This document shows positions 12,898-40,825 of a stretch of 64,000 nt of DNA, piece by piece. The stretch lies in IMG/VR virus record IMGVR_UViG_3300009537_002640, positions 1 through 64,000 of that record; one strand, written 5' to 3'. Position 1 is the stretch's first letter, and every line of letters begins with the position of its first letter. A program made the translations under genes and the position numbers. Under the pieces are notes generated by a model, which was not told the DNA's origin, ran no database searches, and saw only the letters and a list, made by a program, of their open reading frames with translations.

Positions 12898-15800
12898 TAT
12901 CGTTTCAACCTTGCCCCTTTGTATCTTTCGAATATCTCAGTAGAAGTACGAACAGAATTAGATACTCTTACGGCCCCTATAGAGCCATCAAAATATTCAT
13001 CCGTTGACGGCCAATATATCCCCATATACACATCAGCTGTACTAACATGGTTGCCCGTCATAAGCGAATTTTCTGTTTGTCCCAATTGTCGACCGTCAAG
13101 ATACAACGCTAATCTTTTGTCGGCAAAACTATACGTAAACGCTACATAGTGCCAAGCCCCAGCAGTAATTGTACCTAAAGTCAATTGAACGCTTTCTCCT
13201 ACATTATCCATAACTTCTGCAGCAAGATAGCCGTCTGAGCCAACACCTAGAGAAAAGCCTGCACCACCTACTTCTATGCGATTTAGCAATCTTCCATTAT
13301 GCAATGTATCAGCTTGAAACCAACATTCTACAGATAGGTCTTCGTGATCCCATTCAGAGTTAGCAGGTATAACTACGTAATCAGCTGTACCATCAAAAAT
13401 ACGGGCTTTCTCGCCGCTGGAAGAAACACTCAACAGTGGTTCACTTCTTGGAGAGCCGCCATGAATTTCGTTAAACAAATAGCCGTCGCGCTCATCATTG
13501 TTAAAACCCCTCACCTGCATATTATTCCATTCATAATCAAATGTTCCAGTGGTTGCATATTCGGCACGAAGGACATTTCCTATCTGAATCCAACAATCAT
13601 CTTCGGGTCCGGTTGCCTGCCCTAATAATGTTGTTGGTTCAGCCCCATTTATCCCGTAATATGTTCTCCACTTATTACCTTCTCTAGTAAAACGTGTGCT
13701 TATTGAACTAGGAACTACAGCTCCAAATTCAGTAGTGCTAATCGTACTGTACAGATAAGAATATATCCTATTTCTGTTGTTTGATCCATCAAACCATTCA
13801 TCATATACAATGTAAACTGCTACGCCCGATGCTGTTCGCATTCTAACTTCGGACCTATCGGTGCTGCTAGTTGCCCACGGTTGAGGTCTGCTTGGCAAGC
13901 TAGGCATATCTATTCTGAAATCAAAATTCCCAGTGACTCTTAATCCTCCCCGAGAATCTATGAAGACCTGAGAATAGTCTCCGCCTATGTGGTCATTTCT
14001 CAGAACTATATTGCCCCCGGATACAAAAACATCGTTGGAGCCATTTCCTAATAAAGAATCGCCTACTGCTGGGAAAAAACGACGAAAATCATCTGTATCG
14101 GCATAACTAGCCAAAGCGTTGTACGCTAATGGAATAGAGCGATTACTGGTCATTATTTGTCGTCCAGGATCTTCACTAAAATCCCAAATAACCATTGTGT
14201 GTTCGTCTTCTACAAACCCAATCTTGGGGTCATCTGCTGCATGATAAGTATTGTATATTTCCCATGGGGCCCGCACTACATTAGAGAAACGAATGTCGGC
14301 TATATCACCATCGAAATAAAATGTTGCAGATGAGCCTCGACGACCTACAGCGAATGAATTTGTAGTATTGGCGGTTATGCCTGCCGAAATAGTATCTACC
14401 AATTCGCCATCTAAATACCCAGAGAGGTTAGAACCATCGTGAGTCATAGCAAAATGATACCACCTATTGGTCAAAATCTGAGGGCCAGTGAGTGTAAAGC
14501 CAGAACCGTTAGCAGAATTGTACCTTATGTTCATATTTGCGTCGAGGTCGACCCCCCATCCATTAGAATTGTATGCCTCTTTGGAAACTATGTACTGATA
14601 ATCACCAGTAACGCTATGAGCCCTAAACCACCCCTCAATAGTAAATGGAGAACCAATATCAAATGCCGCATCGTCACTATACATATATCCCTGACTACCA
14701 TCAAATCTTGCGCAATGAGTAAAGGGCACTTCGTTATCATCTGCTAGTGCAAGATTACACCCAAGACGAGCCCGTAGGTCTAATGCAGAATTGCCCTTAA
14801 CATTAGTTCCTATTCGTTCTATGAATGGATTTGCTTCCATCAGTCTGAACGTATCAAACTCTGCAGATATAAAAGATGCACCAGTAAATGCGTTGCCAAG
14901 ATATAACGCAGTGCCACTAGTTGTTGTTGCCCAAGTCTGTTCCGTCAACTGATCATTTATGTATAGCTCAATATAATGACTACTAGTATTGCCAGGATCT
15001 AACTCATAACCCCTAACCTCTATTTCGGTCCAATCTTTGGTAAAATCAATTCCGTTCGGGAGTCCAAAGCTTATGGAGCCCTGATCATTAATAATAGTAA
15101 AAGTGTCAACTCCACCATAAACACGCCATCTAGTTCCATCTATAACACTATAGAGAATAGTGTGATTGCTTGCTGTAGGAGTGAAGGGGTTTACGTCTTC
15201 GTCCCTATGTCTAAATTTAATAGTAAAGCCATTAGAAAATTGAGGTACGTAACTAGAGTCATTGGAGCGCCACATGCGGCTATAACTCGATGTAACATTG
15301 AAATTATAGTAGGTCATAGTACCCTTAAATTCCGGTCTCAATGTTTCGCTACTTGAATCTCCAGTGAAATTACTAGGTGGATCATGAACATCACCACCAA
15401 TTGTACTGAAATCAAAATTAAGCTTTGGTGCAGAGCCAGTTGTTTGAGATTCTGCCCGAATTGTTTTATTCATAGGCCACAATGCTACAGTGTTCGCATC
15501 TACTTGCAATCTGCGACCAGAACGAGTAACTACAGGCTGGAGTGCTTGGGCAGCCTGAACGAGTGTAACAGTCACCTCGGGAGAATCAGGACTAGCCTGA
15601 GAAACAGATACGGCTCTAATTTTTGTCCCGGGCTCTTGATTAGAAAAAGGTATACTCATTGAGAATTGTCCATTCTCAGCCGCTATGGTGTACCCATCGG
15701 CAATCAGCCCCTCATCCGTATGTAATTCTGTATGAACGCCATTTAGTGGGGGTACTCTACCCTTGATGCTTACAACGCTAAAAACCTTATCACCGCTGTT

Positions 15801-17939
15801 AGGGTATTCATAATGTACTGGTATAGTAGTAAAATGCCACACATTGCCTGTCGTTCGTCCGCCATAACCAACAGTATCAATTCTCCAGTAATAAGTAGTC
15901 CCCGGATCAAGAGTAGGTAAAACAAAACTCAGCTCGGTTTGTGCACTTTGATAAGTACCCATAAGAATATCACTGGTTACCCCATCCTCATCTTTTCCAA
16001 AATACACCTCATAAGTATTGGCATCTACAGCCGCTCCCCAAGTTATAGACTTGCCTTCAAGCTCTACAAAAGTTGCGCCATTTTCTGGGGTAGGGCTATT
16101 AGGTTGCCCTGGAGGCGGAAGGAACACAACCGTGGTAAAGCTCCACACATCTCCAGTAGTAGTCCCACCTTCGCTAACCTCGTCGATTCTCCAATAATAA
16201 GTAGTGTTGAGTTCAAGAATACCTGGTTCATATGTTGTAGTAGCCTGATTACCTTTAAATGTACCGCCAGTACCATTAGTTACGTCGGTTTGATTGGTTC
16301 CAAAGTACACGTCACTGGTTAATGTGCCCTCACCAGTTACATCCCAACTCAAATCATCGGTAAGAAATATATCAGTGGCGCCATTAGACGGACTTGGGTT
16401 AGATGCCTGATCTGGAGGCGGCACAAATTCCTGGGTACTCATCACCAACAACATCATTTGCCTTAGATCATTTCCAGAAGTAGAAGGAGAGGTAGAATAT
16501 AGCTCCCAGGATTGTTCTACATTTGGAGTTTCACCAGTGAGCAATTCAAATATCCATGGACCAACTACGGAGCCGTCAGTGCCAGTGTAGTTAGAGTTGT
16601 CACCATGCCATTGAACAGCATATGATTGAGAATCCCATATCTTGGTTCCATCTCTGGTAACATCACCAGCAATACCTCTGCTAGTTGTGCTAAAACTTCC
16701 GTCACCTTCAGATTGCACAGAGCCAAATACTATAACTTCGCCTGTGGAGTCTGGAGTAAAACTAAGAGTAGAGCCGCGTTGGGTCCTATTAGTGTTAGCG
16801 GGTGGTGTAGAACCCTCATCAATATCGAAATATGTGAAATTAGCAAATGAATTTAGGCGTATAACAATAATTCTAGCTTCGTCTTTTTCGGCTGCTGAAA
16901 ATGAACGATATTCCGTAACAAGGGTAATTGGAGATGCTGGGGGAGCTGTCTTAATTCCCCATCCGGTATAGCAGTGTTCTTCGTTTCCTAAGTTACCGGT
17001 ACCGATACCTGATTGAAACACTGTGGTTGAGTTAGTAACGTCGCGAAGACGCATAATCATATTACCAGGTATGTTGTCAAAAGCCGCCACGCCTATACAC
17101 AAATAATCAGATGTACCGTCTGGAGTAAAGGTTAGTACTGCAGGATTCCAATCAGCAAATACCCAGGAAGAATTAGCTACTGTGTCAGATAGGTTTATTT
17201 TTTGGGACGCCCCGCTATTTGGTCTCACTAATGTATAGCTGGTACTTCCTTGTGTGCTAGCAAAAACGTTAAGTGGAGATGCTCCATTGATAGCATTAAT
17301 AATAGCCGTTCGTACAGTGCTAGAAGAATCCCCTGGATTCAGAGTAACAGCAATATTGCCAGGAGTTACCCCATCGCCACTAATATCGAATTCGAATGTC
17401 TGGACATTGCCTTCTGTGTCATCGATAGTAAATGTTTCACCATCAACTAGTGTAGACGCCGCCTGATTTTCAATTACAGCAGATGGTTGACTAAATGAAT
17501 GATGAACATGCTGTGAACGAGATGAATCGACAACGTGAAACCAGTCTTCATTCTCGACAAGTCCTGCAGAGTCTAGGTCTATAGCCATTAGTGAGCAGTT
17601 ACGAGCAACACCATTGTTTGAATTGCTGCGCTGAACTGTTAGAGTAATATCTTGCCCAGCTACAGCAGTCCACAATGTACAGCCTTTGTACTGGTGCACA
17701 TTGCTTCCGCCACCAGGAGAAGAATAATCACCACGGATATTATTGTCAGGAGATCCGCCGAAATTCAACCTACAGAATGCACCATGAGAGCCACCTAAGG
17801 TGTGAATAGTGCCAAAAACAAGATACCGGTGCCCTGCAACCAGTTCGGTGTTGCTGATAGTGCATACGGTTAATTCTGTAGAGCTTACAGAAAGCTGGGT
17901 GGTGTGATACGCCTTATCAAATAATACTGTAACAGCCAT
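12897..17939 (-). CDS. 1680 aa putative virion/receptor-binding protein with two FnIII-like repeats and several LamG (concanavalin-like) domains
   Basis: Two repeats ending TYYWRID...G.VW[SH]FTT. LamG motifs RWYHFAMTHDG...FDGDIADIRFSN and AWHYVAFTYS...FDGSIGAVRVSN. Confidence 0.75.
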   Translation of the reverse strand: MAVTVLFDKAYHTTQLSVSSTELTVCTISNTELVAGHRYLVFGTIHTLGGSHGAFCRLNFGGSPDNNIRGDYSSPGGGSNVHQYKGCTLWTAVAGQDITLTVQRSNSNNGVARNCSLMAIDLDSAGLVENEDWFHVVDSSRSQHVHHSFSQPSAVIENQAASTLVDGETFTIDDTEGNVQTFEFDISGDGVTPGNIAVTLNPGDSSSTVRTAIINAINGASPLNVFASTQGSTSYTLVRPNSGASQKINLSDTVANSSWVFADWNPAVLTFTPDGTSDYLCIGVAAFDNIPGNMIMRLRDVTNSTTVFQSGIGTGNLGNEEHCYTGWGIKTAPPASPITLVTEYRSFSAAEKDEARIIVIRLNSFANFTYFDIDEGSTPPANTNRTQRGSTLSFTPDSTGEVIVFGSVQSEGDGSFSTTSRGIAGDVTRDGTKIWDSQSYAVQWHGDNSNYTGTDGSVVGPWIFELLTGETPNVEQSWELYSTSPSTSGNDLRQMMLLVMSTQEFVPPPDQASNPSPSNGATDIFLTDDLSWDVTGEGTLTSDVYFGTNQTDVTNGTGGTFKGNQATTTYEPGILELNTTYYWRIDEVSEGGTTTGDVWSFTTVVFLPPPGQPNSPTPENGATFVELEGKSITWGAAVDANTYEVYFGKDEDGVTSDILMGTYQSAQTELSFVLPTLDPGTTYYWRIDTVGYGGRTTGNVWHFTTIPVHYEYPNSGDKVFSVVSIKGRVPPLNGVHTELHTDEGLIADGYTIAAENGQFSMSIPFSNQEPGTKIRAVSVSQASPDSPEVTVTLVQAAQALQPVVTRSGRRLQVDANTVALWPMNKTIRAESQTTGSAPKLNFDFSTIGGDVHDPPSNFTGDSSSETLRPEFKGTMTYYNFNVTSSYSRMWRSNDSSYVPQFSNGFTIKFRHRDEDVNPFTPTASNHTILYSVIDGTRWRVYGGVDTFTIINDQGSISFGLPNGIDFTKDWTEIEVRGYELDPGNTSSHYIELYINDQLTEQTWATTTSGTALYLGNAFTGASFISAEFDTFRLMEANPFIERIGTNVKGNSALDLRARLGCNLALADDNEVPFTHCARFDGSQGYMYSDDAAFDIGSPFTIEGWFRAHSVTGDYQYIVSKEAYNSNGWGVDLDANMNIRYNSANGSGFTLTGPQILTNRWYHFAMTHDGSNLSGYLDGELVDTISAGITANTTNSFAVGRRGSSATFYFDGDIADIRFSNVVRAPWEIYNTYHAADDPKIGFVEDEHTMVIWDFSEDPGRQIMTSNRSIPLAYNALASYADTDDFRRFFPAVGDSLLGNGSNDVFVSGGNIVLRNDHIGGDYSQVFIDSRGGLRVTGNFDFRIDMPSLPSRPQPWATSSTDRSEVRMRTASGVAVYIVYDEWFDGSNNRNRIYSYLYSTISTTEFGAVVPSSISTRFTREGNKWRTYYGINGAEPTTLLGQATGPEDDCWIQIGNVLRAEYATTGTFDYEWNNMQVRGFNNDERDGYLFNEIHGGSPRSEPLLSVSSSGEKARIFDGTADYVVIPANSEWDHEDLSVECWFQADTLHNGRLLNRIEVGGAGFSLGVGSDGYLAAEVMDNVGESVQLTLGTITAGAWHYVAFTYSFADKRLALYLDGRQLGQTENSLMTGNHVSTADVYMGIYWPSTDEYFDGSIGAVRVSNSVRTSTEIFERYKGARLKR

Positions 17940-23765: not shown

Positions 23766-24416
23766 TTATCCGCTAAGTTCGCCAAGTAGTTGACTCTTGC
23801 GCAACTTAGAGATTGCCTTATTCTTGATTTGTCGGATACGCTCGTGGGTAAGATTGAACATAGGCCCTATCTCACGCAAAGTTTGTGGCTGACGGCCATC
23901 CAAACCGAAGATAAGCCTTACAATCTCACGGTCACGTTCTGGAAGCTCGCCAAGCACTTCTGCTATACGCTCATCACGTTCCTTGACAAAGAATTGCTCT
24001 TCGGGAGTTTCCTCCACCTGCTCTTCTTCCTTGCCAATTTCAGAAGGCTCTGCGTACACAACGCGAGTCTTGTCGGGATTGTACACGACATCGAAACGAC
24101 TTGCTGCACGCTTTACACTATGGCGAATCCATTGCTCCGAAAAGACGAAGAAGTTTGGGAAACGGTTATGGTCAAAGCGACGTACTGCCTTCACAAGACC
24201 AATAAACCCTTCCTGGACCAAATCTTCATAATTAGGGAAACTTCTATATGGTTTAGTTACACTATATACCAAAAAAGAAAGTTCGGTAACTATTCTGTTC
24301 TGGACCTTTTCTACCTGCTTCTCCAATTGATCACTTGACAGAGTGCCATCGGCCTTCAAATCATCAATACTACGAAACAGGTTCATTGCCTCTTCGTTGC
24401 TCATGTAACGACTCAT
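23766..24416 (-). CDS. Compact sigma70-family RNA polymerase sigma factor (regions 2 and 4)
   Basis: Region 2 YEDLVQEGFIGLVKAVRRFD...WIR. RpoD-like region 4 TLREIGPMFNLTHERIRQIKNKAISKLR. 216 aa, region 3 largely absent. Confidence 0.93.
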   Translation of the reverse strand: MSRYMSNEEAMNLFRSIDDLKADGTLSSDQLEKQVEKVQNRIVTELSFLVYSVTKPYRSFPNYEDLVQEGFIGLVKAVRRFDHNRFPNFFVFSEQWIRHSVKRAASRFDVVYNPDKTRVVYAEPSEIGKEEEQVEETPEEQFFVKERDERIAEVLGELPERDREIVRLIFGLDGRQPQTLREIGPMFNLTHERIRQIKNKAISKLRKSQLLGELSG

Positions 24417-24419
24417 AAC

Positions 24420-24977
24420 TTACTCCTCTTCGCTTACATCTTCAACTCTAAATACTTCTTTTAATTTTCCATCTTTCCAAACACGCACTGTGTTGGTCTC
24501 CTCACTAAGAGTTAATACACCAATTACATCGTCGCGTAAAGAAAAACTTGCTGCGGCTTTATGACGTGTGCCACAATCTTCAGGTGTATCTAACATTGGG
24601 TTTGCAACAACTAGATACACCCCCGCCCCTACAATCTGCCCAGACCTATCGACAACAACAGCGCCGTCATGGGGTGGGCGTGAGTACTCTATGACACACT
24701 GCTTTCCTGCCTCTGTGTCTATCATTCTAAGAGCCTCAATCGGATTCTGCTTAGGCTTCATTTGAACCATGCCATCTACTCTAGGTTCTTTTTCAAAATC
24801 TCCTAAGACAACAAGAGCACCCAGCGGATCTTCTATACCAGATGCAACAGCTTTGGCTAAGTCTTTCAGAATTTCAAAGATAGTTCGTTCAAACTTCTCA
24901 TTATTCTTGGCAAAGCTAAATTGCATACTAAAGTCCACATAAGGTGCCTCACTTTGCTTACTCTTTTCTTCTGTCAT
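24420..24977 (-). CDS. Stand-alone diadenylate cyclase (DisA_N/DAC domain, DacZ-like)
   Basis: GALVVLGD, NP, catalytic HDGAVVV, GAGVYL, GTRHKAAA (RHR-like motif), LSEE...VRVWKDG. Confidence 0.85.
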   Translation of the reverse strand: MTEEKSKQSEAPYVDFSMQFSFAKNNEKFERTIFEILKDLAKAVASGIEDPLGALVVLGDFEKEPRVDGMVQMKPKQNPIEALRMIDTEAGKQCVIEYSRPPHDGAVVVDRSGQIVGAGVYLVVANPMLDTPEDCGTRHKAAASFSLRDDVIGVLTLSEETNTVRVWKDGKLKEVFRVEDVSEEE

Positions 24978-24978
24978 T

Positions 24979-25482
24979 TCATTTTCTTTCTGTATCCTCT
25001 TTGGTAACTATTTTCATAGTAAAACCATCTATTACCATACGGTTGTTATCAAAGGAATACTCAATCGTGTCGTATGTGTGTCCTTGTTTTCTTCCATCCC
25101 AAAATACCATGGTGAAATTAGAGTTTTCAACAATGTGCTCATTTACGGTATTATCAAAGAATCCTCTTCCGTCGTCTGTTGTGGGCTTAATAATGCTTAG
25201 TGCATCAGCATATTGGTAAACCCTATTTAAGTCCTCTTTCTGTTCTTCGTACCAGTGCTGTCCCAAAACCTCTGGCAGATAGGGGAGAAATAAATGATAT
25301 TGTTTCTTGGTCTTCAGGCAATGCTTAGCCGCCCAGAGACCGACCCCGATGTTCACAGATATGTTATACACCAACTCATCGCCATATTGAAAGCTCAAAG
25401 TGTCAAGAGTTTCCTGGACACGCTTATCCTCCGCCTGACTAAATACATCAGGCGTATGTCCAACTACACCAACCTTGTACAT
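24979..25482 (-). CDS. SLOG-superfamily protein (YspA/DUF1273-like)
   Basis: VGVVGH start, GVGLWAA, LFLPY, YADA, NEHIVENS..MVFWDG...GHT..TIEY pattern typical of YspA-type SLOG. Confidence 0.65.
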   Translation of the reverse strand: MYKVGVVGHTPDVFSQAEDKRVQETLDTLSFQYGDELVYNISVNIGVGLWAAKHCLKTKKQYHLFLPYLPEVLGQHWYEEQKEDLNRVYQYADALSIIKPTTDDGRGFFDNTVNEHIVENSNFTMVFWDGRKQGHTYDTIEYSFDNNRMVIDGFTMKIVTKEDTERK

Positions 25483-25491
25483 ATATACCCT

Positions 25492-25680
25492 CTACTTGTT
25501 ATTTTCTTCTAGTTCTTCGAGCATCGATTGTAACGCCAGCTGTATAATCTCCACATTCTGCGTACTCATTATAGATTGTAATCGCAGTTGGAGTGTCTTG
25601 GCGTCTATTTCGACTCTCTGTTTACCATTAGAGGTTTTGGTCGTTTTCCAAAGACCCATCCTATTCATTGTTATCCTCAC
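25492..25680 (-). CDS. Small hypothetical protein
   Basis: Fills the gap between spoVR and SLOG; likely start ATG downstream of GGTGAGG. Confidence 0.55.
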   Translation of the reverse strand: MRITMNRMGLWKTTKTSNGKQRVEIDAKTLQLRLQSIMSTQNVEIIQLALQSMLEELEENNK

Positions 25681-27150
25681 CTATAAGATGTCAAATCCCG
25701 CTTCATCAAATACAAATGCTACCGGGTCTGCATCATCACCATAAGTTTTAAGTTCGACTGGTCCTCCCCATAGTTCATATATATATCCCATGGTTTTCTC
25801 AGTATACTTCTCATCTAAAGGGCCAAAGTCGTCTGAATGTTGGAGCATTAATATATCTCCATCTACCTGATTTACTGTCACAAGAGGTGCTCCATAATTA
25901 ATGGTGGGGCGAATTATATTTTCGATAATCTTATCTAACTCTCTATCTTTCAATTCAATAATACCGTACTCTTCGGGCAAATCATCTTCGTCCATACCTG
26001 GTTCTCGTTCATGTCTATATCCATAGTTGAACAAGCCCAGACTTGTAGCTAACTCAGGTGTTAGATAGTTACGTAAGAACGATGCGTCATCTTCTTCAGC
26101 CGCGACCTCTATTACCTTTTGTATGCCAGTGATATCTGATTCACCATCTTTGTACTTCTTATCCCACCTCTCTCGAATATCAGTAAACACTTTGAACCCT
26201 AAATAGTAAGGATTGATTCGGAAAGGGTGTCCTGGACTTACCACTGAAGCGTGGCACTTACAAAACTCTAAATGTTCCTCCTCACTTGTTTCATGATACT
26301 TAAACATTAGCTCCGCATGCCAAAAGGAAGCAAAGCCTTCATTCATAATCTTGGTCATAACAATGGGATAGAAGTAGTACGACTCTTCTCGTATAATACC
26401 AAGTATATCCTTCTCCCATTCTTCTAACGGAGCATAATTAGTAAGAAACCAAAGCAGGTCTCGCTCAGGATGCGGAGGTAGCTTTTCACCTTCCACCCGA
26501 TATCTTATGCTTCTCTTATTATTGTTGATATTTAGTAGATCGTCGAACTCATCCCTATGTACTTTTTCTTCTATTATGTGCTTATCAGGATAGCGTTTTC
26601 TATATACGCCTTTATGCCAATCTATGTGATTATCTAAAGCAAAACCTATATCCATTAGGTGTTCTACTTTCTCTAACCCATATTGCTCTACATAATCATC
26701 AACTCTAGCTGCTCTTTCTGCAGCTCTATAAATCATATTTCGGTCTGAACCCTTAAACATATGATTGTGCTTAAAAAAATGCACATGCCCAAAGACATGT
26801 GCTGCGACCATGATGTTAATTACATCCAAATTTGTATTCAAAAGGAAAGCATAAGATGGGTCATTATTGAATACAATCTCATACACTTTTGATAGCCCCA
26901 TCTCACCATATATCTTTTGGTGGTCATAGGAGCGACCGTATGACCAGTGGCGCGCTCTAACTGGTAAGCCATATGAACAAGCCTCCAGCATGATGTCTCT
27001 ATTAACATATTCAAAGATAGTAGGGAAGAAATCTAATCCCTCTTTACGGGCTAGCTCTTCCATGTCTTTGATTGCTTTAAATACGTATTCTTGGCCCATA
27101 ATAAATATCCTTACACAAGCATTGTGCCTGCCATAGTTACTGTTTTCCAA
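25681..27150 (-). CDS. spoVR: SpoVR/YcgB family protein
   Basis: YGLPVRARHWSYG, YEIVFNNDPSYAFLL, AHVFGHVHFFKHN, TKIMNEGFASFWH, INPYYLG, FLRNYLT, LWGGPVELKT. Confidence 0.95.
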   Translation of the reverse strand: MENSNYGRHNACVRIFIMGQEYVFKAIKDMEELARKEGLDFFPTIFEYVNRDIMLEACSYGLPVRARHWSYGRSYDHQKIYGEMGLSKVYEIVFNNDPSYAFLLNTNLDVINIMVAAHVFGHVHFFKHNHMFKGSDRNMIYRAAERAARVDDYVEQYGLEKVEHLMDIGFALDNHIDWHKGVYRKRYPDKHIIEEKVHRDEFDDLLNINNNKRSIRYRVEGEKLPPHPERDLLWFLTNYAPLEEWEKDILGIIREESYYFYPIVMTKIMNEGFASFWHAELMFKYHETSEEEHLEFCKCHASVVSPGHPFRINPYYLGFKVFTDIRERWDKKYKDGESDITGIQKVIEVAAEEDDASFLRNYLTPELATSLGLFNYGYRHEREPGMDEDDLPEEYGIIELKDRELDKIIENIIRPTINYGAPLVTVNQVDGDILMLQHSDDFGPLDEKYTEKTMGYIYELWGGPVELKTYGDDADPVAFVFDEAGFDIL

Positions 27151-27545
27151 TCGTGATTTAACAACTCTCGTATAGCTGGTTTATCCACTCTCTGATACTC
27201 ATCAATTAGCAGGTGTATATCTCTTGTTCTAATCCCATCAAAGCATCTATCATACATAGAGGTTGCTGCTGTCACACGCATTCTATCCACCCCTGTTCTA
27301 TTAACAAAAGCTTTGACATATTTTTGGGTGGGAACTACCACCATAAAATACTCATTGCGTGAATCAAATATATAAGCAAGTTTGCCCAGCATATTAGTTT
27401 TGCCTGACTGCCGAGGTACAGTACTAACAAAAGCACCATATTCTTGCCACCAAATATCTATCGCGGATGTATACTTTTTGATAGAGGGTAGATAAATATC
27501 ATGATGATATTTCCATCTATACAGCTCTAAATCCATATAGTTCAT
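27111..27545 (-). CDS. Minimal P-loop NTPase (terminase/SF-helicase-like ATPase fold, 144 aa)
   Basis: Walker A VPRQSGKT, FMVVVPT strand, Walker B LLIDE; overlaps both neighbours. Confidence 0.7.
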   Translation of the reverse strand: MNYMDLELYRWKYHHDIYLPSIKKYTSAIDIWWQEYGAFVSTVPRQSGKTNMLGKLAYIFDSRNEYFMVVVPTQKYVKAFVNRTGVDRMRVTAATSMYDRCFDGIRTRDIHLLIDEYQRVDKPAIRELLNHDWKTVTMAGTMLV

Positions 27546-28717
27546 TCTTCCTTACCCTCGATTCCTAAGAACTGTTTCAAACAAGTATAAATGTCTTCTT
27601 TCTGCTCAATAGCTGCTGTAAGAAAACGCGGATGGTCTATACTCTTCTCAAACTCTTGATGAAGGGTAGACCATCTAAACCCACTGCCCCCATAGTTGTA
27701 AAAGCTATCAGTATTAATTTCTCCGTACCCCACCGCACTGCACAGTTCTAGCAACTCTTTTACCAGCTCAACGCACTTCTCATTATCAGATGGCCAGTTG
27801 TCCCCATCACTAAAAGAGAATACGTAATTGTTCCATTGAGCAGGGGGATGATTAGCCTCTATATGCTCTAAGGCCAGCTTGAATGCTGAGCTACACATCG
27901 TTCCACCAGAGTTAGATATCTTGAAGAAGTTCTCTTCAGGAACCACAGCAGCTCTGGTATCGTGAGCAATAAAGATTAACTCTACGAAGTTATACTTGGT
28001 CTTACAAAAGTGCGCCAACCAAAAGAAGAATGATTTAGCTATGTACTTCTTATCGTCATCCATACTGCCTGAGCGGTCCATTAGGAAATACACAGCGGCA
28101 TTGGAGTGATATTCTTTCTCTAAGTCCCATATCTTGTAACGTAAATCTTCTGGGCGGATGTTCTTAATTTCCGCCTTGCCCTTTTTAGCATTACGCTTCA
28201 TGTTCTCGAAGATGGTGCGCTTCTTGTCTACGTTAGACAATGGGCCAACTTCTGCCAAGTCAGTGAACTTAATGTTCTCTGTCTCAATCTCTACTGCACT
28301 ATCCTTAGCCTCAAGCCAGGGCAAGTCAAGGTCTTCTAGCATCATCTGTATGATTTCAGCTAGCTCTACTTCTTCCTCGTAGATTTCATCACCAGCCTGA
28401 TCATCTGCCTGATTGCCAGTGCCTTTACCCTTACGCCCTGTGCCATCATGAGCAATCATATCTCCGGGCTTAGCATCGCCTTCGCCTTGGCCTACACCCT
28501 CTTTATTCTTATCATCAGCGTGCTTAAACCTATACGTATCTAGAAACTTGATAGGAATCTTAACCTTCCTCTTTCCATCAGAGGAGATAATGCTGGCATC
28601 ACTAACCAAATCCTTCAGATTCTCTCGTATGGCCTTTTTAACACGCTGGGAGTGTCGTGCAGAGTCACGCTTGCCGCGTTTACGCATTCCCCAGATATCT
28701 AGTAAGCTATCGCTCAT
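27542..28717 (-). CDS. yhbH: YhbH/YeaH (DUF444) vWA-domain protein
   Basis: RHSQRVKKAIRENL, KVKIPI, GQGEG, LEDLDLPWL, MIDAS motif LMDRSGSM, SGGTMCSSA, FSDGDNW. Confidence 0.93.
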   Translation of the reverse strand: MSDSLLDIWGMRKRGKRDSARHSQRVKKAIRENLKDLVSDASIISSDGKRKVKIPIKFLDTYRFKHADDKNKEGVGQGEGDAKPGDMIAHDGTGRKGKGTGNQADDQAGDEIYEEEVELAEIIQMMLEDLDLPWLEAKDSAVEIETENIKFTDLAEVGPLSNVDKKRTIFENMKRNAKKGKAEIKNIRPEDLRYKIWDLEKEYHSNAAVYFLMDRSGSMDDDKKYIAKSFFFWLAHFCKTKYNFVELIFIAHDTRAAVVPEENFFKISNSGGTMCSSAFKLALEHIEANHPPAQWNNYVFSFSDGDNWPSDNEKCVELVKELLELCSAVGYGEINTDSFYNYGGSGFRWSTLHQEFEKSIDHPRFLTAAIEQKEDIYTCLKQFLGIEGKEE

Positions 28718-28724
28718 TTTAACC

Positions 28725-30719
28725 TCATGTGGTTTTAGACATTAGTGAGTTCACATATCGTAGCAATTGATTTGCTGAATCGACATTATACCCATACTTA
28801 TCAACCAACGTCTCGATAACCTGATTGATTTTCTTCAACGCCTCAGGGTCAGGATTACGTGAGCTAACGGTCAGACGAATGATATCTGCACGCTCGTCGA
28901 ACAGCTGCTTCTCAAGAGCCTCTTTCAATTTAGCATGACTCTGATAGTCAAACTCAACACCATCGCTTCTACGCTGAAGTACCTTACGAAGTGCTTCCTG
29001 CCTAAAACTATCCTTAGTAGCATCACTGATTCCTACCTTCTCTTCGATACTTCTCATTAGCCCATGGTCTGGTTCGTGGTGCTCACCAAACTCATCAACC
29101 AAATCTGTATCATCTAGATAGGCAGCTACGTTATCTACGTAGTTGTTCAACAGGTTGTTGATTTCCTTATCGAAGTTGACAAAGAATGCCTTCTGAACTT
29201 CGGTCTTAGCCATCTTGGTATATTCCTCAATGACAGTCATGATAATCTCATCAAAGCGTTCGAGGTCTTCCTTACCAAACTTGGCACTGCTCTCAAAGTT
29301 TTCCTTAATAGACCTCAGTACATCAATAGGAGTTATGCAACGCAAGTTGTGCTTACTGAAGCAATCTGCAATACAGTTAAAGATGTAACGTGGACTCACT
29401 CCATCCATACCCTCTCTATCTGCCTCTTCCTTAATGTCCTTCAAGTCTTCCTTAGTGAAGCCATCGACATCGCTACTGTTATATAGATGTAGTTTCTTTA
29501 GTAGAGTAAGATTCTGGTCCTTACCTGGCTCTAGACGACTCATAACTGCAAACATAGATGCTACCTTAAGAGTAAGTGGAGCAACATGTACATCACCGAA
29601 ATCGGCTTCAGCAACCAGCTTCTTGTAAATCTTCTCTTCTTCATCTAAGATTAAGTTATACGGAGCCTTCACAACAATGATACGGTCATGCAACGCTTCC
29701 ATCTTAGTGTCCGCCAAGAAACGAGTATATTCGGTTTCATTGGTGTGCGCAAGAATAAACTCATCAGCGTAAATAAGTGGGAAACGCTCAGTTTTAATGG
29801 TCTTTTCTTGTGCTAAGGTTAGTAGTACATGAAGAAACTTAGGGTCAACCTTTAGCATTTCTATCATTTCCATAATGCCACGGTTTGCTACGTTTAATTC
29901 GCCATCAAACTTGTAAGCACGGGGGTCTGATTCAACACCAAACTCGCCTAACTTACTAAAGTCTACAGAGCCTACAAGCTCGGTAATAGATTGGTTCTTA
30001 GTATCGCCTGGTAAGAATGTACCTATGCCGATACGATTGGTTTCTGAAATGAACAGGCGTTTCACTGGCAACTTTAGCCATTCGCCATTATATTTATGGT
30101 CTAGTAGGTGTTGCACTGGCGGGGATAGTCTTGCTAACGGGTCAATCTTAATGCCGTACTTTTCTCGAAACATTGGTCGTAGGTCGACCGGAACAGCATT
30201 AAGTGGATTCTCGTGCATTGGAGAATCTGTAAGGGCATAAATCGCACCTTCTTTAGTGCGAGACCACGCTTCAAGCCCGTGCTTTAGAAGTGTAGCCATT
30301 TGACTCTTACCAGAGCTTGTTGGCCCGTACAGTAGCAAAATACGACGGCCAACTTGAGAGCCACTGGCTGCAGCCTTTAGGTACTTCACTACCTTATGAA
30401 TCATGTTATCAACGCCAAACAACTCCTGGTTAAAAAACTTGTACCTGGGAATCGTTTGTGTTTTGTCTTCCTCATCGTAGTCCACACCTGCACTGAGTAT
30501 CATATCTAATACTCGGGAATGGGCTAACTGAGCAAGTTTAGGGTTTTCTTGAACCAAAGGAATGAATTCTTCCAGGGTACCTTCCCACTCATGAGTATCC
30601 TGTTTCCTGCTAAACTCGGCGATATCTTTAAAGATATCTTGTTTAGTTCCTTGTCCCTCTAATGTCTTTTCATCGGACATAGTATTACCTCCACTGTTAA
30701 GAACCTTGCTTCTTGACAT
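28725..30719 (-). CDS. prkA: PrkA/YeaG family AAA+ protein
   Basis: Walker A LYGPTSSGKS, SPMHENPL, ESDPRAYKFDGELNVANRG, AHTNETEY, EALHDR, EGMDGVSPRY. There is a second in-frame ATG at 30680, also with GGAGG. Confidence 0.95.
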   Translation of the reverse strand: MSRSKVLNSGGNTMSDEKTLEGQGTKQDIFKDIAEFSRKQDTHEWEGTLEEFIPLVQENPKLAQLAHSRVLDMILSAGVDYDEEDKTQTIPRYKFFNQELFGVDNMIHKVVKYLKAAASGSQVGRRILLLYGPTSSGKSQMATLLKHGLEAWSRTKEGAIYALTDSPMHENPLNAVPVDLRPMFREKYGIKIDPLARLSPPVQHLLDHKYNGEWLKLPVKRLFISETNRIGIGTFLPGDTKNQSITELVGSVDFSKLGEFGVESDPRAYKFDGELNVANRGIMEMIEMLKVDPKFLHVLLTLAQEKTIKTERFPLIYADEFILAHTNETEYTRFLADTKMEALHDRIIVVKAPYNLILDEEEKIYKKLVAEADFGDVHVAPLTLKVASMFAVMSRLEPGKDQNLTLLKKLHLYNSSDVDGFTKEDLKDIKEEADREGMDGVSPRYIFNCIADCFSKHNLRCITPIDVLRSIKENFESSAKFGKEDLERFDEIIMTVIEEYTKMAKTEVQKAFFVNFDKEINNLLNNYVDNVAAYLDDTDLVDEFGEHHEPDHGLMRSIEEKVGISDATKDSFRQEALRKVLQRRSDGVEFDYQSHAKLKEALEKQLFDERADIIRLTVSSRNPDPEALKKINQVIETLVDKYGYNVDSANQLLRYVNSLMSKTT

Positions 30720-30780: not shown

Positions 30781-31041
30781 CTATTTTTCGCCATATAAAT
30801 CTAAGAAATGCTTATCTTTTCCCTGGCCCATTTCTTTCCTAATGCGGTCAGCATCAGGTGCTATTTTCTGATTGTACAAATCTTTAGCACTTAGCCATGT
30901 TCTATTATTCCACGCAGATAAAAGCTTTTTAAACTCTGTGCATTCGCATTCTGGACATGTAATTTCCGGAGGATCCTTACCACGCTGGAACTTCTCTAAC
31001 ACGAGTTCACATTTTTGACACTGGAAATTAAATAACGGCAT
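30781..31041 (-). CDS. FmdB-family zinc-ribbon protein
   Basis: MPLFNFQCQKC...CPECEC motif. Confidence 0.8.
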   Translation of the reverse strand: MPLFNFQCQKCELVLEKFQRGKDPPEITCPECECTEFKKLLSAWNNRTWLSAKDLYNQKIAPDADRIRKEMGQGKDKHFLDLYGEK

Positions 31042-35070: not shown

Positions 35071-35805
35071 TTAGCTCCTTATGTTAAGCATGTCATCTTT
35101 AATAAGATTCATTTTGGTTGCCTGCGCTATAACCCTAAACTCAGATGACTCGGGATTAATATCAGAGCTATAAGTCTTGACATACCCTAATAGCGCACCA
35201 AGGTCATTCATTGTATTAAGTTCGTAGTTAGTGAAAATCTCTGGTACATTATCGCCACACCAAGTAATGAAGTCTTTGGGCAACTTAGATGCCCTCGTAA
35301 AAGTCTTCTTCTTTTCTAAGTAGAGATTGTACTTACGCACAATGTTGGGTGTATTTAGATACGCAAAGCTGGTTATATCTGTATTTCTACCTATAGTTTT
35401 TGTGAAGAACCAATATATATATCTTCTTACCTCGTGTGCATCCCCTTGAAACGCACTTAAAAGAGACCAGGCATCTCGTACTTCTTTCGCACCATATGGA
35501 TTAGGATTTTGTGGAACAAACACATAATCTATATCGTAGTGCTTCTTGTACATACTACAAAAGAAGCCCACTATACAACTAACCTGGTGCTTCTTATTAT
35601 CCCAATTGTCCTTTATCTTGTACAGCTGGAGATAATCATTGTAGAACTTTTGCCATGTAAGCTCTTGCGCCCCGCATTTCTCACAGGTAAAAATAGGAGC
35701 ATTGTTTTCATGCGTAAGAAGATATTTACCAGGACACTTTACCCCTGCGATTACGTTTTTGCACTGGCTTACTCTTCTTCGCTTTCGCTTTTTGGTCTGT
35801 GTCAT
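35071..35805 (-). CDS. Hypothetical protein in the replication module, N-terminal Cys motifs
   Basis: 244 aa with a basic N-terminus and CEKC; lies between the SF2 helicase and the loader/helicase genes. Confidence 0.75.
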   Translation of the reverse strand: MTQTKKRKRRRVSQCKNVIAGVKCPGKYLLTHENNAPIFTCEKCGAQELTWQKFYNDYLQLYKIKDNWDNKKHQVSCIVGFFCSMYKKHYDIDYVFVPQNPNPYGAKEVRDAWSLLSAFQGDAHEVRRYIYWFFTKTIGRNTDITSFAYLNTPNIVRKYNLYLEKKKTFTRASKLPKDFITWCGDNVPEIFTNYELNTMNDLGALLGYVKTYSSDINPESSEFRVIAQATKMNLIKDDMLNIRS

Positions 35806-37288
35806 TAGTTAACCCTTTCTTGCTTGGTAGCTTGATTTTAAACCCTGCTTCGCTTCTATATATTTCTACTCTCTTTGCAGTATGGTTTAGCAGATATTTA
35901 GCATCGTCTATAAAATCTACTACTATTGCATCGGTCTTTCCTTTAGCAGGGCGAATAACCCTGCCAATACGCTGTAATGCCCTGGTTGAAGATTTGCCAG
36001 AGCCAGCTAATATTAGTGCATCCAGATTCGGAAGATTGATTCCCTGGTCATACACGACACTGGCAATGATTACATCTATCTTGCCACTAAGGAAATCCTG
36101 TCGAATCCTGTTGCGTTCTTCTGAGTCTACGTCGCCCCTTACAAAGTATATTACAAGATCTTCATCGAATTTGGAAAGTAAAATCTCCCCATGCTTGATA
36201 TTTTTTACTAAGATTAGGACTTTTCTGCCTTTTTCCAATAGCTTATTGGCGCACTTAACAATCTTGTCATTGCGCACATCATTCTCTACAACAAACGTCT
36301 TATATATAGAGGGGTATTTTTCAGGCAGAATCCCTTCATAGGCGGGAACATTAAGCAAATGAATAGTGGGCTGAACCAACCAACCATCTTTTATCAGCTC
36401 TGTGGCAGTAACCTCAACTATCTGTTTACCACAAACAGCCTCTAACAACAGATCAGCACCATCATCTCTAAATGGTGTGCCGCTAAACCCGTATTTGAAA
36501 TAGGCAGATTCGCTGGCGTTATTTATGGTTTGCATAGTTTGTGTTGCTAAGAATTGACATTCATCAAAGATAATCATCTCGGAAGCTTTAATCGCCTTTG
36601 CTATCTTTTCCTTGTTTTTGTCGTCGAACTTTTCTTTCTTAACAACATCTTCATCATCAAACGATTTATATTCTTCGCCCAGGGCACTTGCCGCTGTCCA
36701 TACGCTACATACATTTATCTTCTTAATGATAGCTTGTCCGTCACCGATGATGCCTACTTCTGTGCCAAGCATCTCCTCAAACGTTTCCTTCATTTGATAT
36801 AGCAGGTCTACGCCTATAACGTACACCATTGTCTTAACATTGGTTTCTGCTATGAGACGAGTAATCATTACAGACTTGCCACTACCTGTGGCTGCCTTAA
36901 CTATGCCTCCCTTGTGTTGTAGGCATGCTTGGTGCACTCGGTCTTGGTATGGCCTGCTTTCAATCTTTTTGGTTTTGATTTTGCGCTTGAGCTTAACTTC
37001 CTTGCGCTGGTCATCGATGGTGAACTTTACATTGTAGTTTTGAAGAATGTTGGTTACTTTGTGTAAAAGGCCAGTGTGAAAGCGCAACTTACCGTCCAGT
37101 AGGTGATTCCTACCATCCCATTTTTCCCACTTCTTGTTTTTGCTATTCCACCAGCCCGTCTTAAAAGCTTTGGTAAATTGATAGCCCTGAACATAGTAGC
37201 TTAATGCTTTATCTAACTTGTATTTAACATCACTACTTTCCAGTCCGTCAATCTTGGAATAGACGTTGTTTACAATTATAGTAACCAT
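35726..37288 (-). CDS. Superfamily 2 helicase (UvsW/RAD25-like)
   Basis: SRPYQ, AATGSGKS, IFDECQ, FGFSGTPFR, GINLPNL, LQRIGRVIR. Confidence 0.92.
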   Translation of the reverse strand: MVTIIVNNVYSKIDGLESSDVKYKLDKALSYYVQGYQFTKAFKTGWWNSKNKKWEKWDGRNHLLDGKLRFHTGLLHKVTNILQNYNVKFTIDDQRKEVKLKRKIKTKKIESRPYQDRVHQACLQHKGGIVKAATGSGKSVMITRLIAETNVKTMVYVIGVDLLYQMKETFEEMLGTEVGIIGDGQAIIKKINVCSVWTAASALGEEYKSFDDEDVVKKEKFDDKNKEKIAKAIKASEMIIFDECQFLATQTMQTINNASESAYFKYGFSGTPFRDDGADLLLEAVCGKQIVEVTATELIKDGWLVQPTIHLLNVPAYEGILPEKYPSIYKTFVVENDVRNDKIVKCANKLLEKGRKVLILVKNIKHGEILLSKFDEDLVIYFVRGDVDSEERNRIRQDFLSGKIDVIIASVVYDQGINLPNLDALILAGSGKSSTRALQRIGRVIRPAKGKTDAIVVDFIDDAKYLLNHTAKRVEIYRSEAGFKIKLPSKKGLTNDTDQKAKAKKSKPVQKRNRRGKVSW

Positions 37289-40613: not shown

Positions 40614-40825
40614 GTAACATACTGTGGCTTTTTCACAGGCGGCAATGACATTTTTAGAGTAGCTGGAGCAACATTGCTATTTAGCACCTTACTACGAAAC
40701 TCATCGTATTCTTTATAGAAACCTACAAGCTCTGAAACCTGTACTCTAATTCTATCTGGCTTCAGTAGAGCTTTGTATATCCACTTAAGTTCTCTTTTTA
40801 CTGGTATTCTTTTACTTGTCATCAA
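40577..40825 (-). CDS. Hypothetical protein
   Basis: ORF whose stop overlaps the rmlB start (ATGA). Confidence 0.6.
   Translation of the reverse strand: MMTSKRIPVKRELKWIYKALLKPDRIRVQVSELVGFYKEYDEFRSKVLNSNVAPATLKMSLPPVKKPQYVTWIEKFLCEEEE

What the first reader, a model, noticed from the sequence alone, without database searches (positions are those of the whole stretch)
24420..24977. Stand-alone, apparently unregulated diadenylate cyclase in a viral context
The catalytic DGA and RH(K) motifs and the SEE motif are present, but there are no TM helices (unlike CdaA), no HhH (unlike DisA) and no PK_C or PTS input domain (unlike cellular DacZ-type proteins). A 185 aa bare DAC could raise c-di-AMP during infection, affecting K+/osmolyte transport, cell wall or the sporulation checkpoint. 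It could also drain ATP or interfere with nucleotide-signal immunity. Phage enzymes that destroy or sequester cyclic nucleotides are well known; phage synthases much less so.
Basis: partly seen in the sequence, partly recalled or inferred. Interest (0 to 1): 0.8.

Follow-up and report, generated by a model that had tools for sequence, protein, structure and literature searches.

The report
Diadenylate cyclase family in jumbo phages
An uncultivated giant bacteriophage carries a small, soluble enzyme that very probably makes the bacterial second messenger cyclic di-AMP, and it belongs to a widespread clade found mostly in phages that I found described nowhere, so some large phages may write this host signal themselves.

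Summary
Window 24420-24977 (-) is a 185-aa ORF. It matches Pfam DAC (PF02457) at 65.9 bits against a cut-off of 27. DGA (104-106), RHK (138-140) and SEE (158-160) are present, and there is no TM helix or second domain. An AlphaFold model (pLDDT 86) matches CdaA, DacA, DisA and CdaM cyclase domains.

The window is the first 64 kb of a 206-kb IMG/VR contig with jumbo-phage gene content. The protein belongs to a distinct clade of about 165-215-aa DACs. I found 97 clusters, all metagenomic, and a long branch separates them from cellular DacZ-type enzymes. The clade sits on phage-like contigs of 47-481 kb and has its own conserved N-terminal motif (P-x-VDFS-x-QF).

In the window's lineage the gene lies in a tightly packed array: Zn-ribbon, PrkA, DUF444, ORF144, SpoVR, ORF62, SLOG/YpsA, DAC, sigma-70 factor, then RNR.

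GenBank phage genomes, PHROGs, BFVD and the searchable literature show no counterpart. Short stand-alone relatives do occur in a cellular-looking context.

Best reading: an active c-di-AMP synthase that takes control of host c-di-AMP signalling during infection. "Unregulated" is not shown. Host, product and role are untested.

The parts
24420..24977 (-). Phage diadenylate cyclase (DAC domain protein), 185 aa
   Evidence: ORF. PF02457 at 65.9 bits. AF2 model pLDDT 86, pTM 0.80. Foldseek best hits are CdaA/DacA/CdaM/DisA DAC domains at E about 1e-7, probability 1.00.
24918..24944 (-). Family-specific N-terminal motif P-Y-V-D-F-S-M-Q-F (residues 12-20)
   Evidence: Q19 is invariant and D15 and F16 are at least 90% conserved in A1. 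The motif is kept in the divergent and cellular-like branches. The profile match of family members starts here, whereas cellular DacZ-type proteins match only from about profile position 25.
24660..24668 (-). DGA catalytic motif (residues 104-106)
   Evidence: Invariant in A1. Coordinates.
24612..24617 (-). Y121-L122, aligned with the Y-L pair of CdaA
   Evidence: At least 90% conserved. Aligned to the CdaA/DacA 'YL' in the phmmer alignments.
24558..24572 (-). G-T-R-H-K (RHR-type motif, residues 136-140)
   Evidence: R138 and H139 are invariant and G136 and T137 at least 90% conserved. The third position varies (K/I/L/M here; A/L/I/T/M/R in the DacZ-like outgroup).
24498..24506 (-). S-E-E motif (residues 158-160)
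   Evidence: Invariant in A1. Coordinates.
24979..25482 (-). SLOG/YpsA-like protein (167 aa), 1 nt upstream of the DAC
   Evidence: PF06908 YpsA at 35.5 bits. Homologues at the same position in L003 (35% id, E 4e-42) and L004 (28% id, E 3e-31). Atlas places it in virus-dominated YpsA/DprA-like clusters.
25492..25680 (-). Small ORF (62 aa) between SpoVR and SLOG
   Evidence: An ORF of 52-62 aa sits at the same position in L001, L003, L004 and the P0091 contig. Only a below-cut-off Pfam hit at E 0.0064, taken as chance. Homology between the copies was not tested.
25681..27150 (-). SpoVR-like protein (489 aa)
   Evidence: PF04293 at 354.7 bits.
27111..27545 (-). ORF144, weak P-loop (AAA_30/AAA_19) similarity, overlapping both neighbours
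   Evidence: A 148-152-aa ORF sits at the same place in L001 and the P0091 contig.
27542..28717 (-). DUF444 (YeaH/YhbH-like) protein
   Evidence: PF04285 at 325 bits.
28725..30719 (-). PrkA/YeaG-like AAA protein
   Evidence: PF08298 at 374 bits plus PF06798 at 233 bits.
30781..31041 (-). Zn-ribbon protein (86 aa) preceding PrkA
   Evidence: ORF with CxxC...CxxC. A Zn_ribbon_8 ORF sits at the same place in L001, L003 and L004.
23766..24416 (-). Sigma-70-family factor (216 aa), 3 nt downstream of the DAC
   Evidence: Sigma70_r2 and Sigma70_r4. phrog_351 RNA polymerase sigma factor. Found at the same place in L001, L003, L004, L007 and the P0091 contig.

Best explanation
The ORF encodes a catalytically competent, soluble, minimal diadenylate cyclase. 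It belongs to a DAC clade found mostly in phages and is carried by an uncultivated jumbo phage of about 206 kb that infects a bacterium.

Mechanism, inferred from the DAC family: two DAC domains meet head to head, each binds one ATP with a divalent metal, and together they form c-di-AMP. The DGA, G-T-R-H and S-E-E residues do this chemistry.

The protein lacks the membrane anchor and sensor domains through which cells throttle their own cyclases, and the phage expresses it. It would therefore set the infected cell's c-di-AMP level independently of host control.

The gene is packed with a PrkA-DUF444-SpoVR trio, whose cellular counterparts are starvation or sporulation-associated, and with a SLOG protein and a phage sigma factor. 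This suggests one takeover cassette. I infer that it holds the host in a state favourable for a long infection by changing K+/osmolyte uptake and turgor and by damping starvation or dormancy signalling.

Shown here: identity, fold, motif conservation, clade structure, phage context and synteny. Inferred: activity, product, co-transcription, oligomeric state, host and physiological purpose.
For: Family membership: PF02457 at 65.9 bits, and PDB DAC chains hit by sequence and by fold.

Catalytic residues are invariant across sequences down to 34% identity.

The K in RHK is unproblematic, because that position varies among the nearest cellular DACs.

Soluble, single domain.

Clade: the profile search gives about 30 representative clusters that match full length, then DacZ-type multidomain proteins. 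In the tree, 51 short DACs are separated from the DacZ-like set by a branch of length 1.4 with SH-aLRT 100.

Phage context: IMG/VR UViG; UvsW-like helicase, DnaB and loader, TubZ-like tubulin, PIN-PhoH, dUTPase, RNR, homing endonucleases, all genes on one strand.

Synteny: the same array occurs on contigs of 167, 327 and 481 kb and in divergent IMG/VR contigs. Other phage-like contexts are L014, L015 and L016.

Tight packing: SLOG to DAC 1 nt, DAC to sigma 3 nt, and 0-9 nt gaps or overlaps back to PrkA.

A sigma-70-family factor implies a bacterial host.

Literature: c-di-AMP levels do affect phage-host outcomes. Accumulation inhibits Listeria prophage induction (10.64898/2026.05.13.725036). 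Host DacZ c-di-AMP rises on viral infection and is sensed by a TIR-SAVED effector (10.1101/2025.06.19.660554).
Against: There is no biochemical data, and the product and metal are unknown.

The host is unidentified, so I do not know whether it uses c-di-AMP at all.

The link to PrkA/SpoVR may be inherited gene order within one phage lineage rather than functional coupling. DAC relatives in L014, L015, L016 and the P0093 contig lack the trio nearby.

The SLOG partner is missing in L007, L008 and L011 and belongs to a family common in phages generally.

No capsid, terminase or tail hallmark lies in the 64-kb window.

Promoter and terminator scans were no better than shuffles, so the operon is inferred from spacing alone.

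Foldseek TM-scores are moderate (0.5-0.67).

No c-di-AMP riboswitch or other Rfam family is present in the window, and no c-di-AMP receptor was recognised there.
Confidence: 0.55

Rival explanations
1. Phage-internal signal. The c-di-AMP made by the enzyme is read mainly by phage-encoded proteins, such as the adjacent SLOG domain protein, the PrkA/DUF444/SpoVR trio or the sigma factor. It would time the phage's own developmental programme rather than host physiology, and this could work even in a host that lacks c-di-AMP signalling.
For: SLOG, DAC and sigma are separated by 1-3 nt and co-occur in the main clade across DAC identities down to about 43%. Structural neighbours of the SLOG protein are fused to NADAR, NUDIX and SLATT modules, and SLOG domains are described as using NAD+ to make ADP-ribose-derived signals (PMC7824862).
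Against: I know of no SLOG protein shown to bind c-di-AMP. SLOG is absent from L007, L008 and L011, and sigma from L008 and L011. Other DAC-carrying phage contigs have neither. No known c-di-AMP receptor domain or riboswitch was found in the window.
Confidence: 0.15
2. Interference with nucleotide-based immunity or with competing phages. The c-di-AMP would act as a decoy or competitor for cyclic-oligonucleotide receptors such as CBASS effectors. Alternatively it would suppress induction of resident prophages, or modify the cell surface or turgor to exclude superinfection.
For: A SAVED effector can read c-di-AMP (10.1101/2025.06.19.660554). c-di-AMP accumulation inhibits prophage induction in Listeria (10.64898/2026.05.13.725036). 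The window also holds a Macro-domain protein, a domain type that degrades ADP-ribose-derived signals according to the jumbo-phage review (PMC7824862).
Against: In the one documented case, c-di-AMP activates the effector, which would harm the virus. PADLOC has no model matching the DAC or the SLOG protein. No known anti-defence gene is adjacent.
Confidence: 0.12
3. Non-catalytic role. The protein is kept as an ATP or c-di-AMP binding module (a sponge), or as a partner that titrates host DAC regulators, rather than as a synthase.
For: Phage sponges for cyclic nucleotides are well known (for example Acb2, PMC10312549). Some branch members carry EGA instead of DGA.
Against: The full catalytic set (DGA, RH, SEE) is invariant in the phage clade. 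A binder would be expected to relax the metal-binding and catalytic acid residues. EGA variants were seen in the sequences tied to the cellular-like context (P0114, P0115, P0117). One search counts 10 EGA among the 129 family-like sequences without saying which branches the others lie on.
Confidence: 0.08
4. Not viral. The contig is cellular or plasmid DNA misfiled as a virus, and the gene is an ordinary host cyclase.
For: No structural hallmark gene lies in the window. The weak 'phage' hits in GenBank turned out to be host cdaA-ybbR-glmM DNA. A related branch sits in a cellular-looking aconitase/fumarase operon.
Against: IMG/VR lists the contig as a UViG. All 59 ORFs of at least 110 aa outside overlaps lie on one strand. 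Phage-type genes are present: UvsW-like helicase, TubZ, PIN-PhoH, homing endonucleases and giant Laminin_G proteins. The same array occurs on 167-481-kb contigs. Two pattern scans of 185,579 species genomes found no relative.
Confidence: 0.03

Closest known systems
DacZ/CdaZ-type diadenylate cyclases (archaeal and bacterial: DACZ_N, PK_C or PTS_EIIA_2 plus a C-terminal DAC)
   Same: They are the nearest cellular relatives by profile score (about 62-82 bits), and DacZ is the best NCBIfam model (47 bits). They share the DAC core, including the helix that precedes it, and a variable third residue in the RHx motif.
   Different: The phage protein has no N-terminal sensor domain. It scores 47 bits against the equivalog cut-off of 430. 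A long, fully supported branch separates it from them. It has its own N-terminal motif.
CdaA/DacA (membrane-anchored essential cyclase of Firmicutes and many other bacteria)
   Same: Best structural matches (6hvm, 8c4n, 6gyw; E about 1e-7, 25-27% identity). Same DGA, Y-L, G-T-R-H and S-E-E residues. To my knowledge, truncated soluble CdaA catalytic domains are active in vitro, which gives a precedent for a bare DAC being active.
   Different: No CdaA_N transmembrane domain and no cdaR/ybbR or glmM neighbours (contrast L017 and L018). TIGR00159 scores 42 bits against a cut-off of 189.
CdaS (sporulation-specific soluble cyclase, about 207 aa) and DisA
   Same: CdaS is also small and soluble. DisA shares the DAC fold (3c1y, 9y9y).
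   Different: The CdaS model matches only residues 95-173, at 35.8 bits against a cut-off of 225, so the N-terminal helical domain is not shared. DisA's linker and HhH domain are absent, at 28 bits against 201.
Phage-borne PrkA-DUF444-SpoVR trios (Thermus phages phiYS40/TMA, Ralstonia phage RsoM2USA, metagenomic huge phages LR756502/LR756511)
   Same: The same three genes occur in large phages (PMC8504454).
   Different: Identity is only 24-37%. None of these genomes gave a DAC hit by tblastn. The DAC, SLOG and sigma additions are specific to the lineage described here.

Membership tests
DAC domain superfamily (PF02457, diadenylate cyclases) | Sequence match to the DAC profile above the curated threshold | tested here: met
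   65.9 bits against a gathering cut-off of 27, covering profile positions 3-119 of 119.
DAC domain superfamily (PF02457, diadenylate cyclases) | DGA motif | tested here: met
   D104-G105-A106, invariant in 32 family members.
DAC domain superfamily (PF02457, diadenylate cyclases) | RHR motif | tested here: inconclusive
   R138-H139 are invariant, but the third residue is K (I/L/M in other members). That position also varies in the nearest cellular DacZ-like proteins. The effect on activity was not measured.
DAC domain superfamily (PF02457, diadenylate cyclases) | Acidic metal-binding S-E-E segment | tested here: met
   S158-E159-E160 invariant.
DAC domain superfamily (PF02457, diadenylate cyclases) | DAC alpha/beta fold | tested here: met
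   AF2 pLDDT 86, pTM 0.80. The Foldseek PDB hits shown are all DAC domains, probability 1.00, TM 0.5-0.67.
DAC domain superfamily (PF02457, diadenylate cyclases) | Head-to-head dimer, and synthesis of c-di-AMP from two ATP | not testable with these tools
   No multimer modelling or biochemistry was available.
CdaA | N-terminal three-helix membrane domain (CdaA_N); cdaR and glmM neighbours | tested here: not met
   No CdaA_N hit. Maximum hydropathy 1.39. The neighbours are SLOG and sigma. TIGR00159 scores 42 bits against 189.
DisA | DAC plus helical linker plus C-terminal HhH DNA-binding domain (about 360 aa) | tested here: not met
   The protein is 185 aa with the DAC domain only. NF010009 scores 28 bits against 201.
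CdaS | N-terminal two-helix autoinhibitory domain plus DAC; equivalog-level score | tested here: not met
   NF038328 scores 35.8 bits against 225 and matches only residues 95-173. PDB 2fb5 matches only residues 98-165.
DacZ/CdaZ | N-terminal DACZ_N, PK_C-like or other sensor domain preceding the DAC | tested here: not met
   NF041371 scores 47 bits against 430 and aligns only to profile positions 117-261. No DACZ_N, PK_C or EIIA hit, whereas outgroup proteins P0130, P0134 and P0141 have them.
Phage short-DAC clade (defined here) | About 165-215 aa, full-length match including the N-terminal P-x-[VI]-D-F-x-x-Q motif, phage-like gene context | tested here: met
   for sequence. for context.

The most novel reading that the evidence does not exclude
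Large phages of several lineages carry their own c-di-AMP synthase clade. It is ancient enough to have diversified to about 30% identity and may have been exchanged with cells. They use it as a virus-made second messenger. In the window's lineage it may be wired to a phage sigma factor, a SLOG nucleotide-sensor-like protein and a PrkA-DUF444-SpoVR module, forming a self-contained viral signalling circuit. Such a circuit could reprogramme host dormancy and osmotic state, and might work even in hosts that have no c-di-AMP system of their own.
Probability: 0.3. Interest if true: 0.85.

Novelty: new variant of a known kind. Interest (0 to 1): 0.62.

Why it matters
c-di-AMP is the only second messenger known to be both essential and toxic in many bacteria. 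It controls potassium and osmolyte homeostasis and cell-wall integrity, and it cross-talks with (p)ppGpp.

Known phage dealings with cyclic nucleotides are mostly destructive: nucleases and sponges. A conserved phage-borne synthase would mean that viruses also write this signal.

It would give the field three things:
- a minimal, soluble, naturally deregulated DAC for biochemistry;
- a handle on why jumbo phages carry the enigmatic PrkA-YeaH-SpoVR trio;
- a new class of host-takeover gene to look for in viromes.

It also bears on defence systems that read c-di-AMP.

Tried and rejected
- Megablast of 10 kb around the gene against GenBank phages gave no match.
- tblastn of the DAC against the same collection gave 15 weak hits in unannotated, UNVERIFIED records. 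The two I examined are host operons, cdaA-ybbR-glmM and cdaA-ybbR, so I rejected them as phage DACs.
- PHROGs and PADLOC have no family for the DAC or the SLOG protein.
- BFVD has no structural match at E<=0.001.
- Two pattern scans of GTDB species genomes found no relative, one with the phage clade and one with the cellular-like branch. A first attempt failed for lack of conserved stretches. The scans rely on family-specific peptide patterns, so absence is not proven.
- Rfam at gathering thresholds on the window found nothing, including no c-di-AMP riboswitch. A multi-locus Rfam call exceeded the size limit and was not repeated.
- Promoter and terminator scans did not differ from shuffles.
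- Sequencing-run search listed none for 4.5 kb and one soil DNA run with 4% of words for the gene. I did not lay reads, so there is no expression evidence.
- Galperin's 2023 survey of DAC architectures is not held, so I could not check whether it lists viral or stand-alone forms.
- Host identification was not achieved: no tRNAs and no taxonomy in the protein searches.
- I considered CdaS-like autoinhibition and rejected it on the NCBIfam and PDB alignments.
- ATP drain is unlikely, because as far as I recall DACs are slow enzymes. This was not tested.

Full report
**1. The observation**

The window has an ATG-initiated ORF of 185 codons at 24420-24977 on the minus strand.
- It matches Pfam PF02457 (DAC) over essentially the whole profile, at 65.9 bits against a cut-off of 27, and matches nothing else.
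- Motif positions: DGA at residues 104-106, Y-L at 121-122, G-T-R-H-K at 136-140, S-E-E at 158-160.
- Hydropathy peaks at 1.39 inside a beta-strand, so there is no membrane helix.
- The NCBIfam models for DacZ, CdaA, CdaS, DisA and CdaM all match only the cyclase core, far below their cut-offs. The accessory parts that define those classes are therefore missing.

**2. Fold and catalytic competence**

An AlphaFold2 model built on a 32-sequence family alignment has mean pLDDT 86 and pTM 0.80.
- The Foldseek PDB matches shown are all DAC domains: CdaA 6hvm and 8c4n, S. aureus DacA 6gyw, CdaM 8ofj and DisA 3c1y and 9y9y. They score E about 1e-7, probability 1.00, TM 0.5-0.67.
- Sequence search of the PDB gives the same proteins and aligns HDGA, YL, GTRH and SEET with their CdaA counterparts.
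- In the family alignment D104, G105, A106, R138, H139, S158, E159 and E160 are invariant down to 34% identity.
- The third residue of the classical RHR motif is K here. It is K/I/L/M across the family and A/L/I/T/M/R/V/Q in the nearest cellular DACs, so it is not a conserved position in this part of the superfamily.
- I conclude that the protein is very probably an active cyclase. This is an inference from conservation, not a measurement.

**3. What genome this is**

The window is the first 64 kb of IMGVR_UViG_3300009537_002640, a contig of 206,495 bp.
- Essentially all real genes are on the minus strand and there are no tRNAs.
- Recognisable genes:
  - PIN-PhoH, dUTPase, an RNR with a TSCPD domain, DnaB with an IstB-like loader;
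  - a UvsW-like helicase, found in 2,884 phage records, with Bacillus phages vB_BpsS-140 and G the best isolates at about 32% identity;
  - a TubZ/PhuZ-like tubulin;
  - HNH and LAGLIDADG homing endonucleases, and a Macro-domain protein;
  - a large glycan and nonulosonic-acid gene cluster, and two giant Laminin_G_3 proteins of 3634 and 1680 aa.
- No capsid, terminase or tail hallmark lies in these 64 kb. The viral assignment rests on IMG/VR, on this gene content and on the relatives described next.
- Nothing in GenBank phages is similar at the DNA level.
- The sigma-70-family factor next to the cyclase implies a bacterial host. I could not identify which one.

**4. The family**

A search of 5.8 billion proteins found 97 clusters at 36-92% identity, nearly all 165-215 aa and all from metagenomes.

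An exhaustive profile search gave two tiers:
- About 30 representative clusters match over the full length, including a conserved N-terminal segment (consensus P-x-VDFS-x-QF; Q19 invariant, D15 and F16 at least 90%).
- A lower tier at about 82 bits or less consists of multidomain cellular cyclases that match only from about profile position 25. Of five checked, four carry DACZ_N, PK_C or PTS_EIIA_2 in front of the DAC, which is the DacZ type; the fifth (P0139, 191 aa) has the DAC domain alone.

A maximum-likelihood tree of 85 DAC domains puts the 51 short proteins on one side of a branch of length 1.4 with SH-aLRT 100.

Contexts of the short clade:
- The window's array recurs on contigs of 167, 327 and 481 kb and on a 13-kb contig.
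- Divergent IMG/VR contigs of 47-135 kb keep SpoVR-DAC-(sigma)-RNR.
- Other phage-like contigs of 70, 80 and 152 kb and a 21-kb contig carry the DAC without the PrkA trio.
- One branch (P0096, P0114, P0116 and relatives) sits between aconitase-family large and small subunit genes, next to class I fumarase subunits. These proteins have long basic tails and sometimes EGA in place of DGA. That context looks cellular. In the midpoint-rooted tree the branch is nested among the phage sequences with only moderate support (81-91), so I draw no direction of transfer.

The Atlas search also lists DAC clusters of about 180 aa labelled Uroviricota, Methanobacteriota and Planctomycetota. A bare DAC is therefore not a phage monopoly, but this clade is found mostly in phages.

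**5. The neighbourhood**

On the minus strand the order is as follows, with gaps:
- Zn-ribbon, then 61 nt to PrkA
- PrkA, then 7 nt to DUF444
- DUF444 overlaps ORF144 by 4 nt
- ORF144 overlaps SpoVR by 40 nt
- SpoVR, then 0 nt to ORF62
- ORF62, then 9 nt to SLOG/YpsA
- SLOG/YpsA, then 1 nt to the DAC
- DAC, then 3 nt to the sigma factor
- sigma factor, then 84 nt to RNR

This spacing suggests co-transcription. Consensus promoter and terminator scans were uninformative.

The SLOG protein is conserved at this position in the main clade (28-35% identity) but is absent in L007, L008 and L011. It belongs to virus-dominated YpsA/DprA-like clusters whose structural neighbours are fused to NADAR, NUDIX and SLATT modules.

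PrkA-DUF444-SpoVR trios are known in Thermus phages, Ralstonia phage RsoM2USA and metagenomic huge phages, but none of those genomes gave a DAC hit.

All SpoVR-linked contigs also share the DnaB ... RNR ... PhoH backbone. The adjacency may therefore be inherited gene order, so I treat functional coupling as a hypothesis.

**6. How it most likely works**

- Shown: a single-domain DAC with intact active-site residues, in a phage, in a compact array with regulatory-looking genes.
- Inferred from the family's established mechanism: head-to-head dimerisation and condensation of two ATP to c-di-AMP with a divalent metal.
- Inferred from architecture: it has no membrane anchor, no CdaR/GlmM-type partners and no sensor domain. 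Its activity would therefore not follow the host's controls, and would depend on expression level, self-association and possibly phage partners. The conserved N-terminal motif is the obvious candidate for either.
- Inferred purpose: imposing a high-c-di-AMP state. To my knowledge, in c-di-AMP-using bacteria this closes K+ and osmolyte uptake, lowers turgor and opposes starvation signalling.
- This fits with carrying a PrkA-YeaH-SpoVR trio, whose cellular counterparts are tied to starvation and sporulation, and a phage sigma factor.
- Recent work shows that c-di-AMP levels matter in virus-host interactions. Accumulation inhibits Listeria prophage induction (10.64898/2026.05.13.725036). In Haloferax, infection raises DacZ-made c-di-AMP, which a TIR-SAVED effector reads (10.1101/2025.06.19.660554).

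Rivals, with my estimates:
- a phage-internal signal read by cassette proteins (0.15);
- interference with immunity or with competitors (0.12);
- a non-catalytic binder (0.08);
- misassigned cellular DNA (0.03).

**7. Comparison with the known, and novelty**

The protein works like a CdaA catalytic domain and is closest in sequence to the DacZ type. It fails the defining accessory features of CdaA, DisA, CdaS and DacZ; for CdaM only the below-cut-off score and the absence of a predicted TM helix were checked (see the membership table).

I found no counterpart:
- in 50,697 GenBank phage records; the hits I examined are host cdaA operons in UNVERIFIED records;
- in PHROGs, PADLOC or BFVD;
- in the papers searched.

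The 2021 comparative survey of 224 jumbo phages mentions neither DAC nor PrkA/SpoVR. Galperin's 2023 DAC survey could not be read.

I rate it a new variant of a known kind: a known enzyme fold in a distinct, phage-dominated clade with a minimal architecture, its own N-terminal motif and a new genomic setting.

**8. Verdict**

Identity and viral context hold. 'Unregulated' and the physiological effects are open.
- Interest is 0.62. It is a clean, testable and apparently undescribed case of a virus encoding a synthase for an essential bacterial second messenger. It is widespread among uncultivated large phages, but rests on a well-understood enzyme family and has no host or activity data yet.

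Noticed in passing
window 25681-30719 (-), plus 30781-31041: A complete PrkA (AAA_PrkA+PrkA), DUF444 and SpoVR trio in a phage. It has an extra 144-aa weak P-loop ORF overlapping DUF444 and SpoVR, and a Zn-ribbon ORF upstream. The same trio occurs at only 24-37% identity in Thermus phages, Ralstonia phage RsoM2USA and metagenomic huge phages.
   Followed up: partly
window 24979-25482 (-): A SLOG/YpsA-like protein immediately upstream of the cyclase. It is conserved at that position in the main clade, and its structural neighbours are fused to NADAR, NUDIX and SLATT modules.
   Followed up: partly
window 23766-24416 (-): A phage sigma-70-family factor (regions 2 and 4). Its best NCBIfam and PADLOC hit is the C-terminal part of MzaA, the sigma factor of the MZA anti-phage system, well below that model's cut-off.
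   Followed up: no
window 1490-12394 and 12897-17939 (-): Two giant ORFs (3634 and 1680 aa) with Laminin_G_3 and Big_5 domains, probably fibre or adhesin proteins. Relative L004 has a 2725-aa ORF at the corresponding end.
   Followed up: no
window 37295-38728 (-): A TubZ/PhuZ-like tubulin (Tubulin plus TubZ-like_C), next to a UvsW-like helicase at 35726-37288.
   Followed up: no
window 38730-63954 (-): A glycan-biosynthesis region of about 25 kb. It holds three nucleotide-sugar epimerases, UDP-glucose dehydrogenase, two NeuB-family synthases, a GT4 glycosyltransferase, two CDP-glycerol glycerophosphotransferase-like proteins, several methyltransferases, an acetyltransferase and a saccharopine-dehydrogenase-like protein. 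HNH (40812-41801) and LAGLIDADG (49437-50243) ORFs interrupt it.
   Followed up: no
window 52480-52953 (-): A stand-alone Macro-domain protein, a candidate ADP-ribose-signal hydrolase.
   Followed up: no
L008 5331-7940; L015 1-2431; P0091 and P0093 contigs: Inteins with LAGLIDADG endonucleases inside SpoVR (L008) and inside the RNR of several relatives.
   Followed up: no
L015 14243-15136: A 297-aa DHH protein with a weak DHHA1 match lies 6 kb downstream of the DAC on a 152-kb phage-like contig. The DHH/DHHA1 family includes c-di-AMP and pApA phosphodiesterases, so one phage may carry both a synthase and a hydrolase.
   Followed up: partly
L012 6748-9301; L013 212-2852; P0116 contig: A sister branch of short DACs is inserted between aconitase-family large and small subunit genes, next to class I fumarase subunit genes, in cellular-looking contigs. 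These proteins carry long basic low-complexity tails. P0114, P0115 and P0117 have EGA instead of DGA.
   Followed up: partly
L017 (OR845009.1) and L018 (MT837076.1): GenBank records labelled as phage (UNVERIFIED) carry host operons: S. aureus dacA-ybbR-glmM in L017, and cdaA-ybbR followed by an FAD-dependent oxidoreductase in L018. They are a trap for anyone counting phage cyclases by BLAST.
   Followed up: yes
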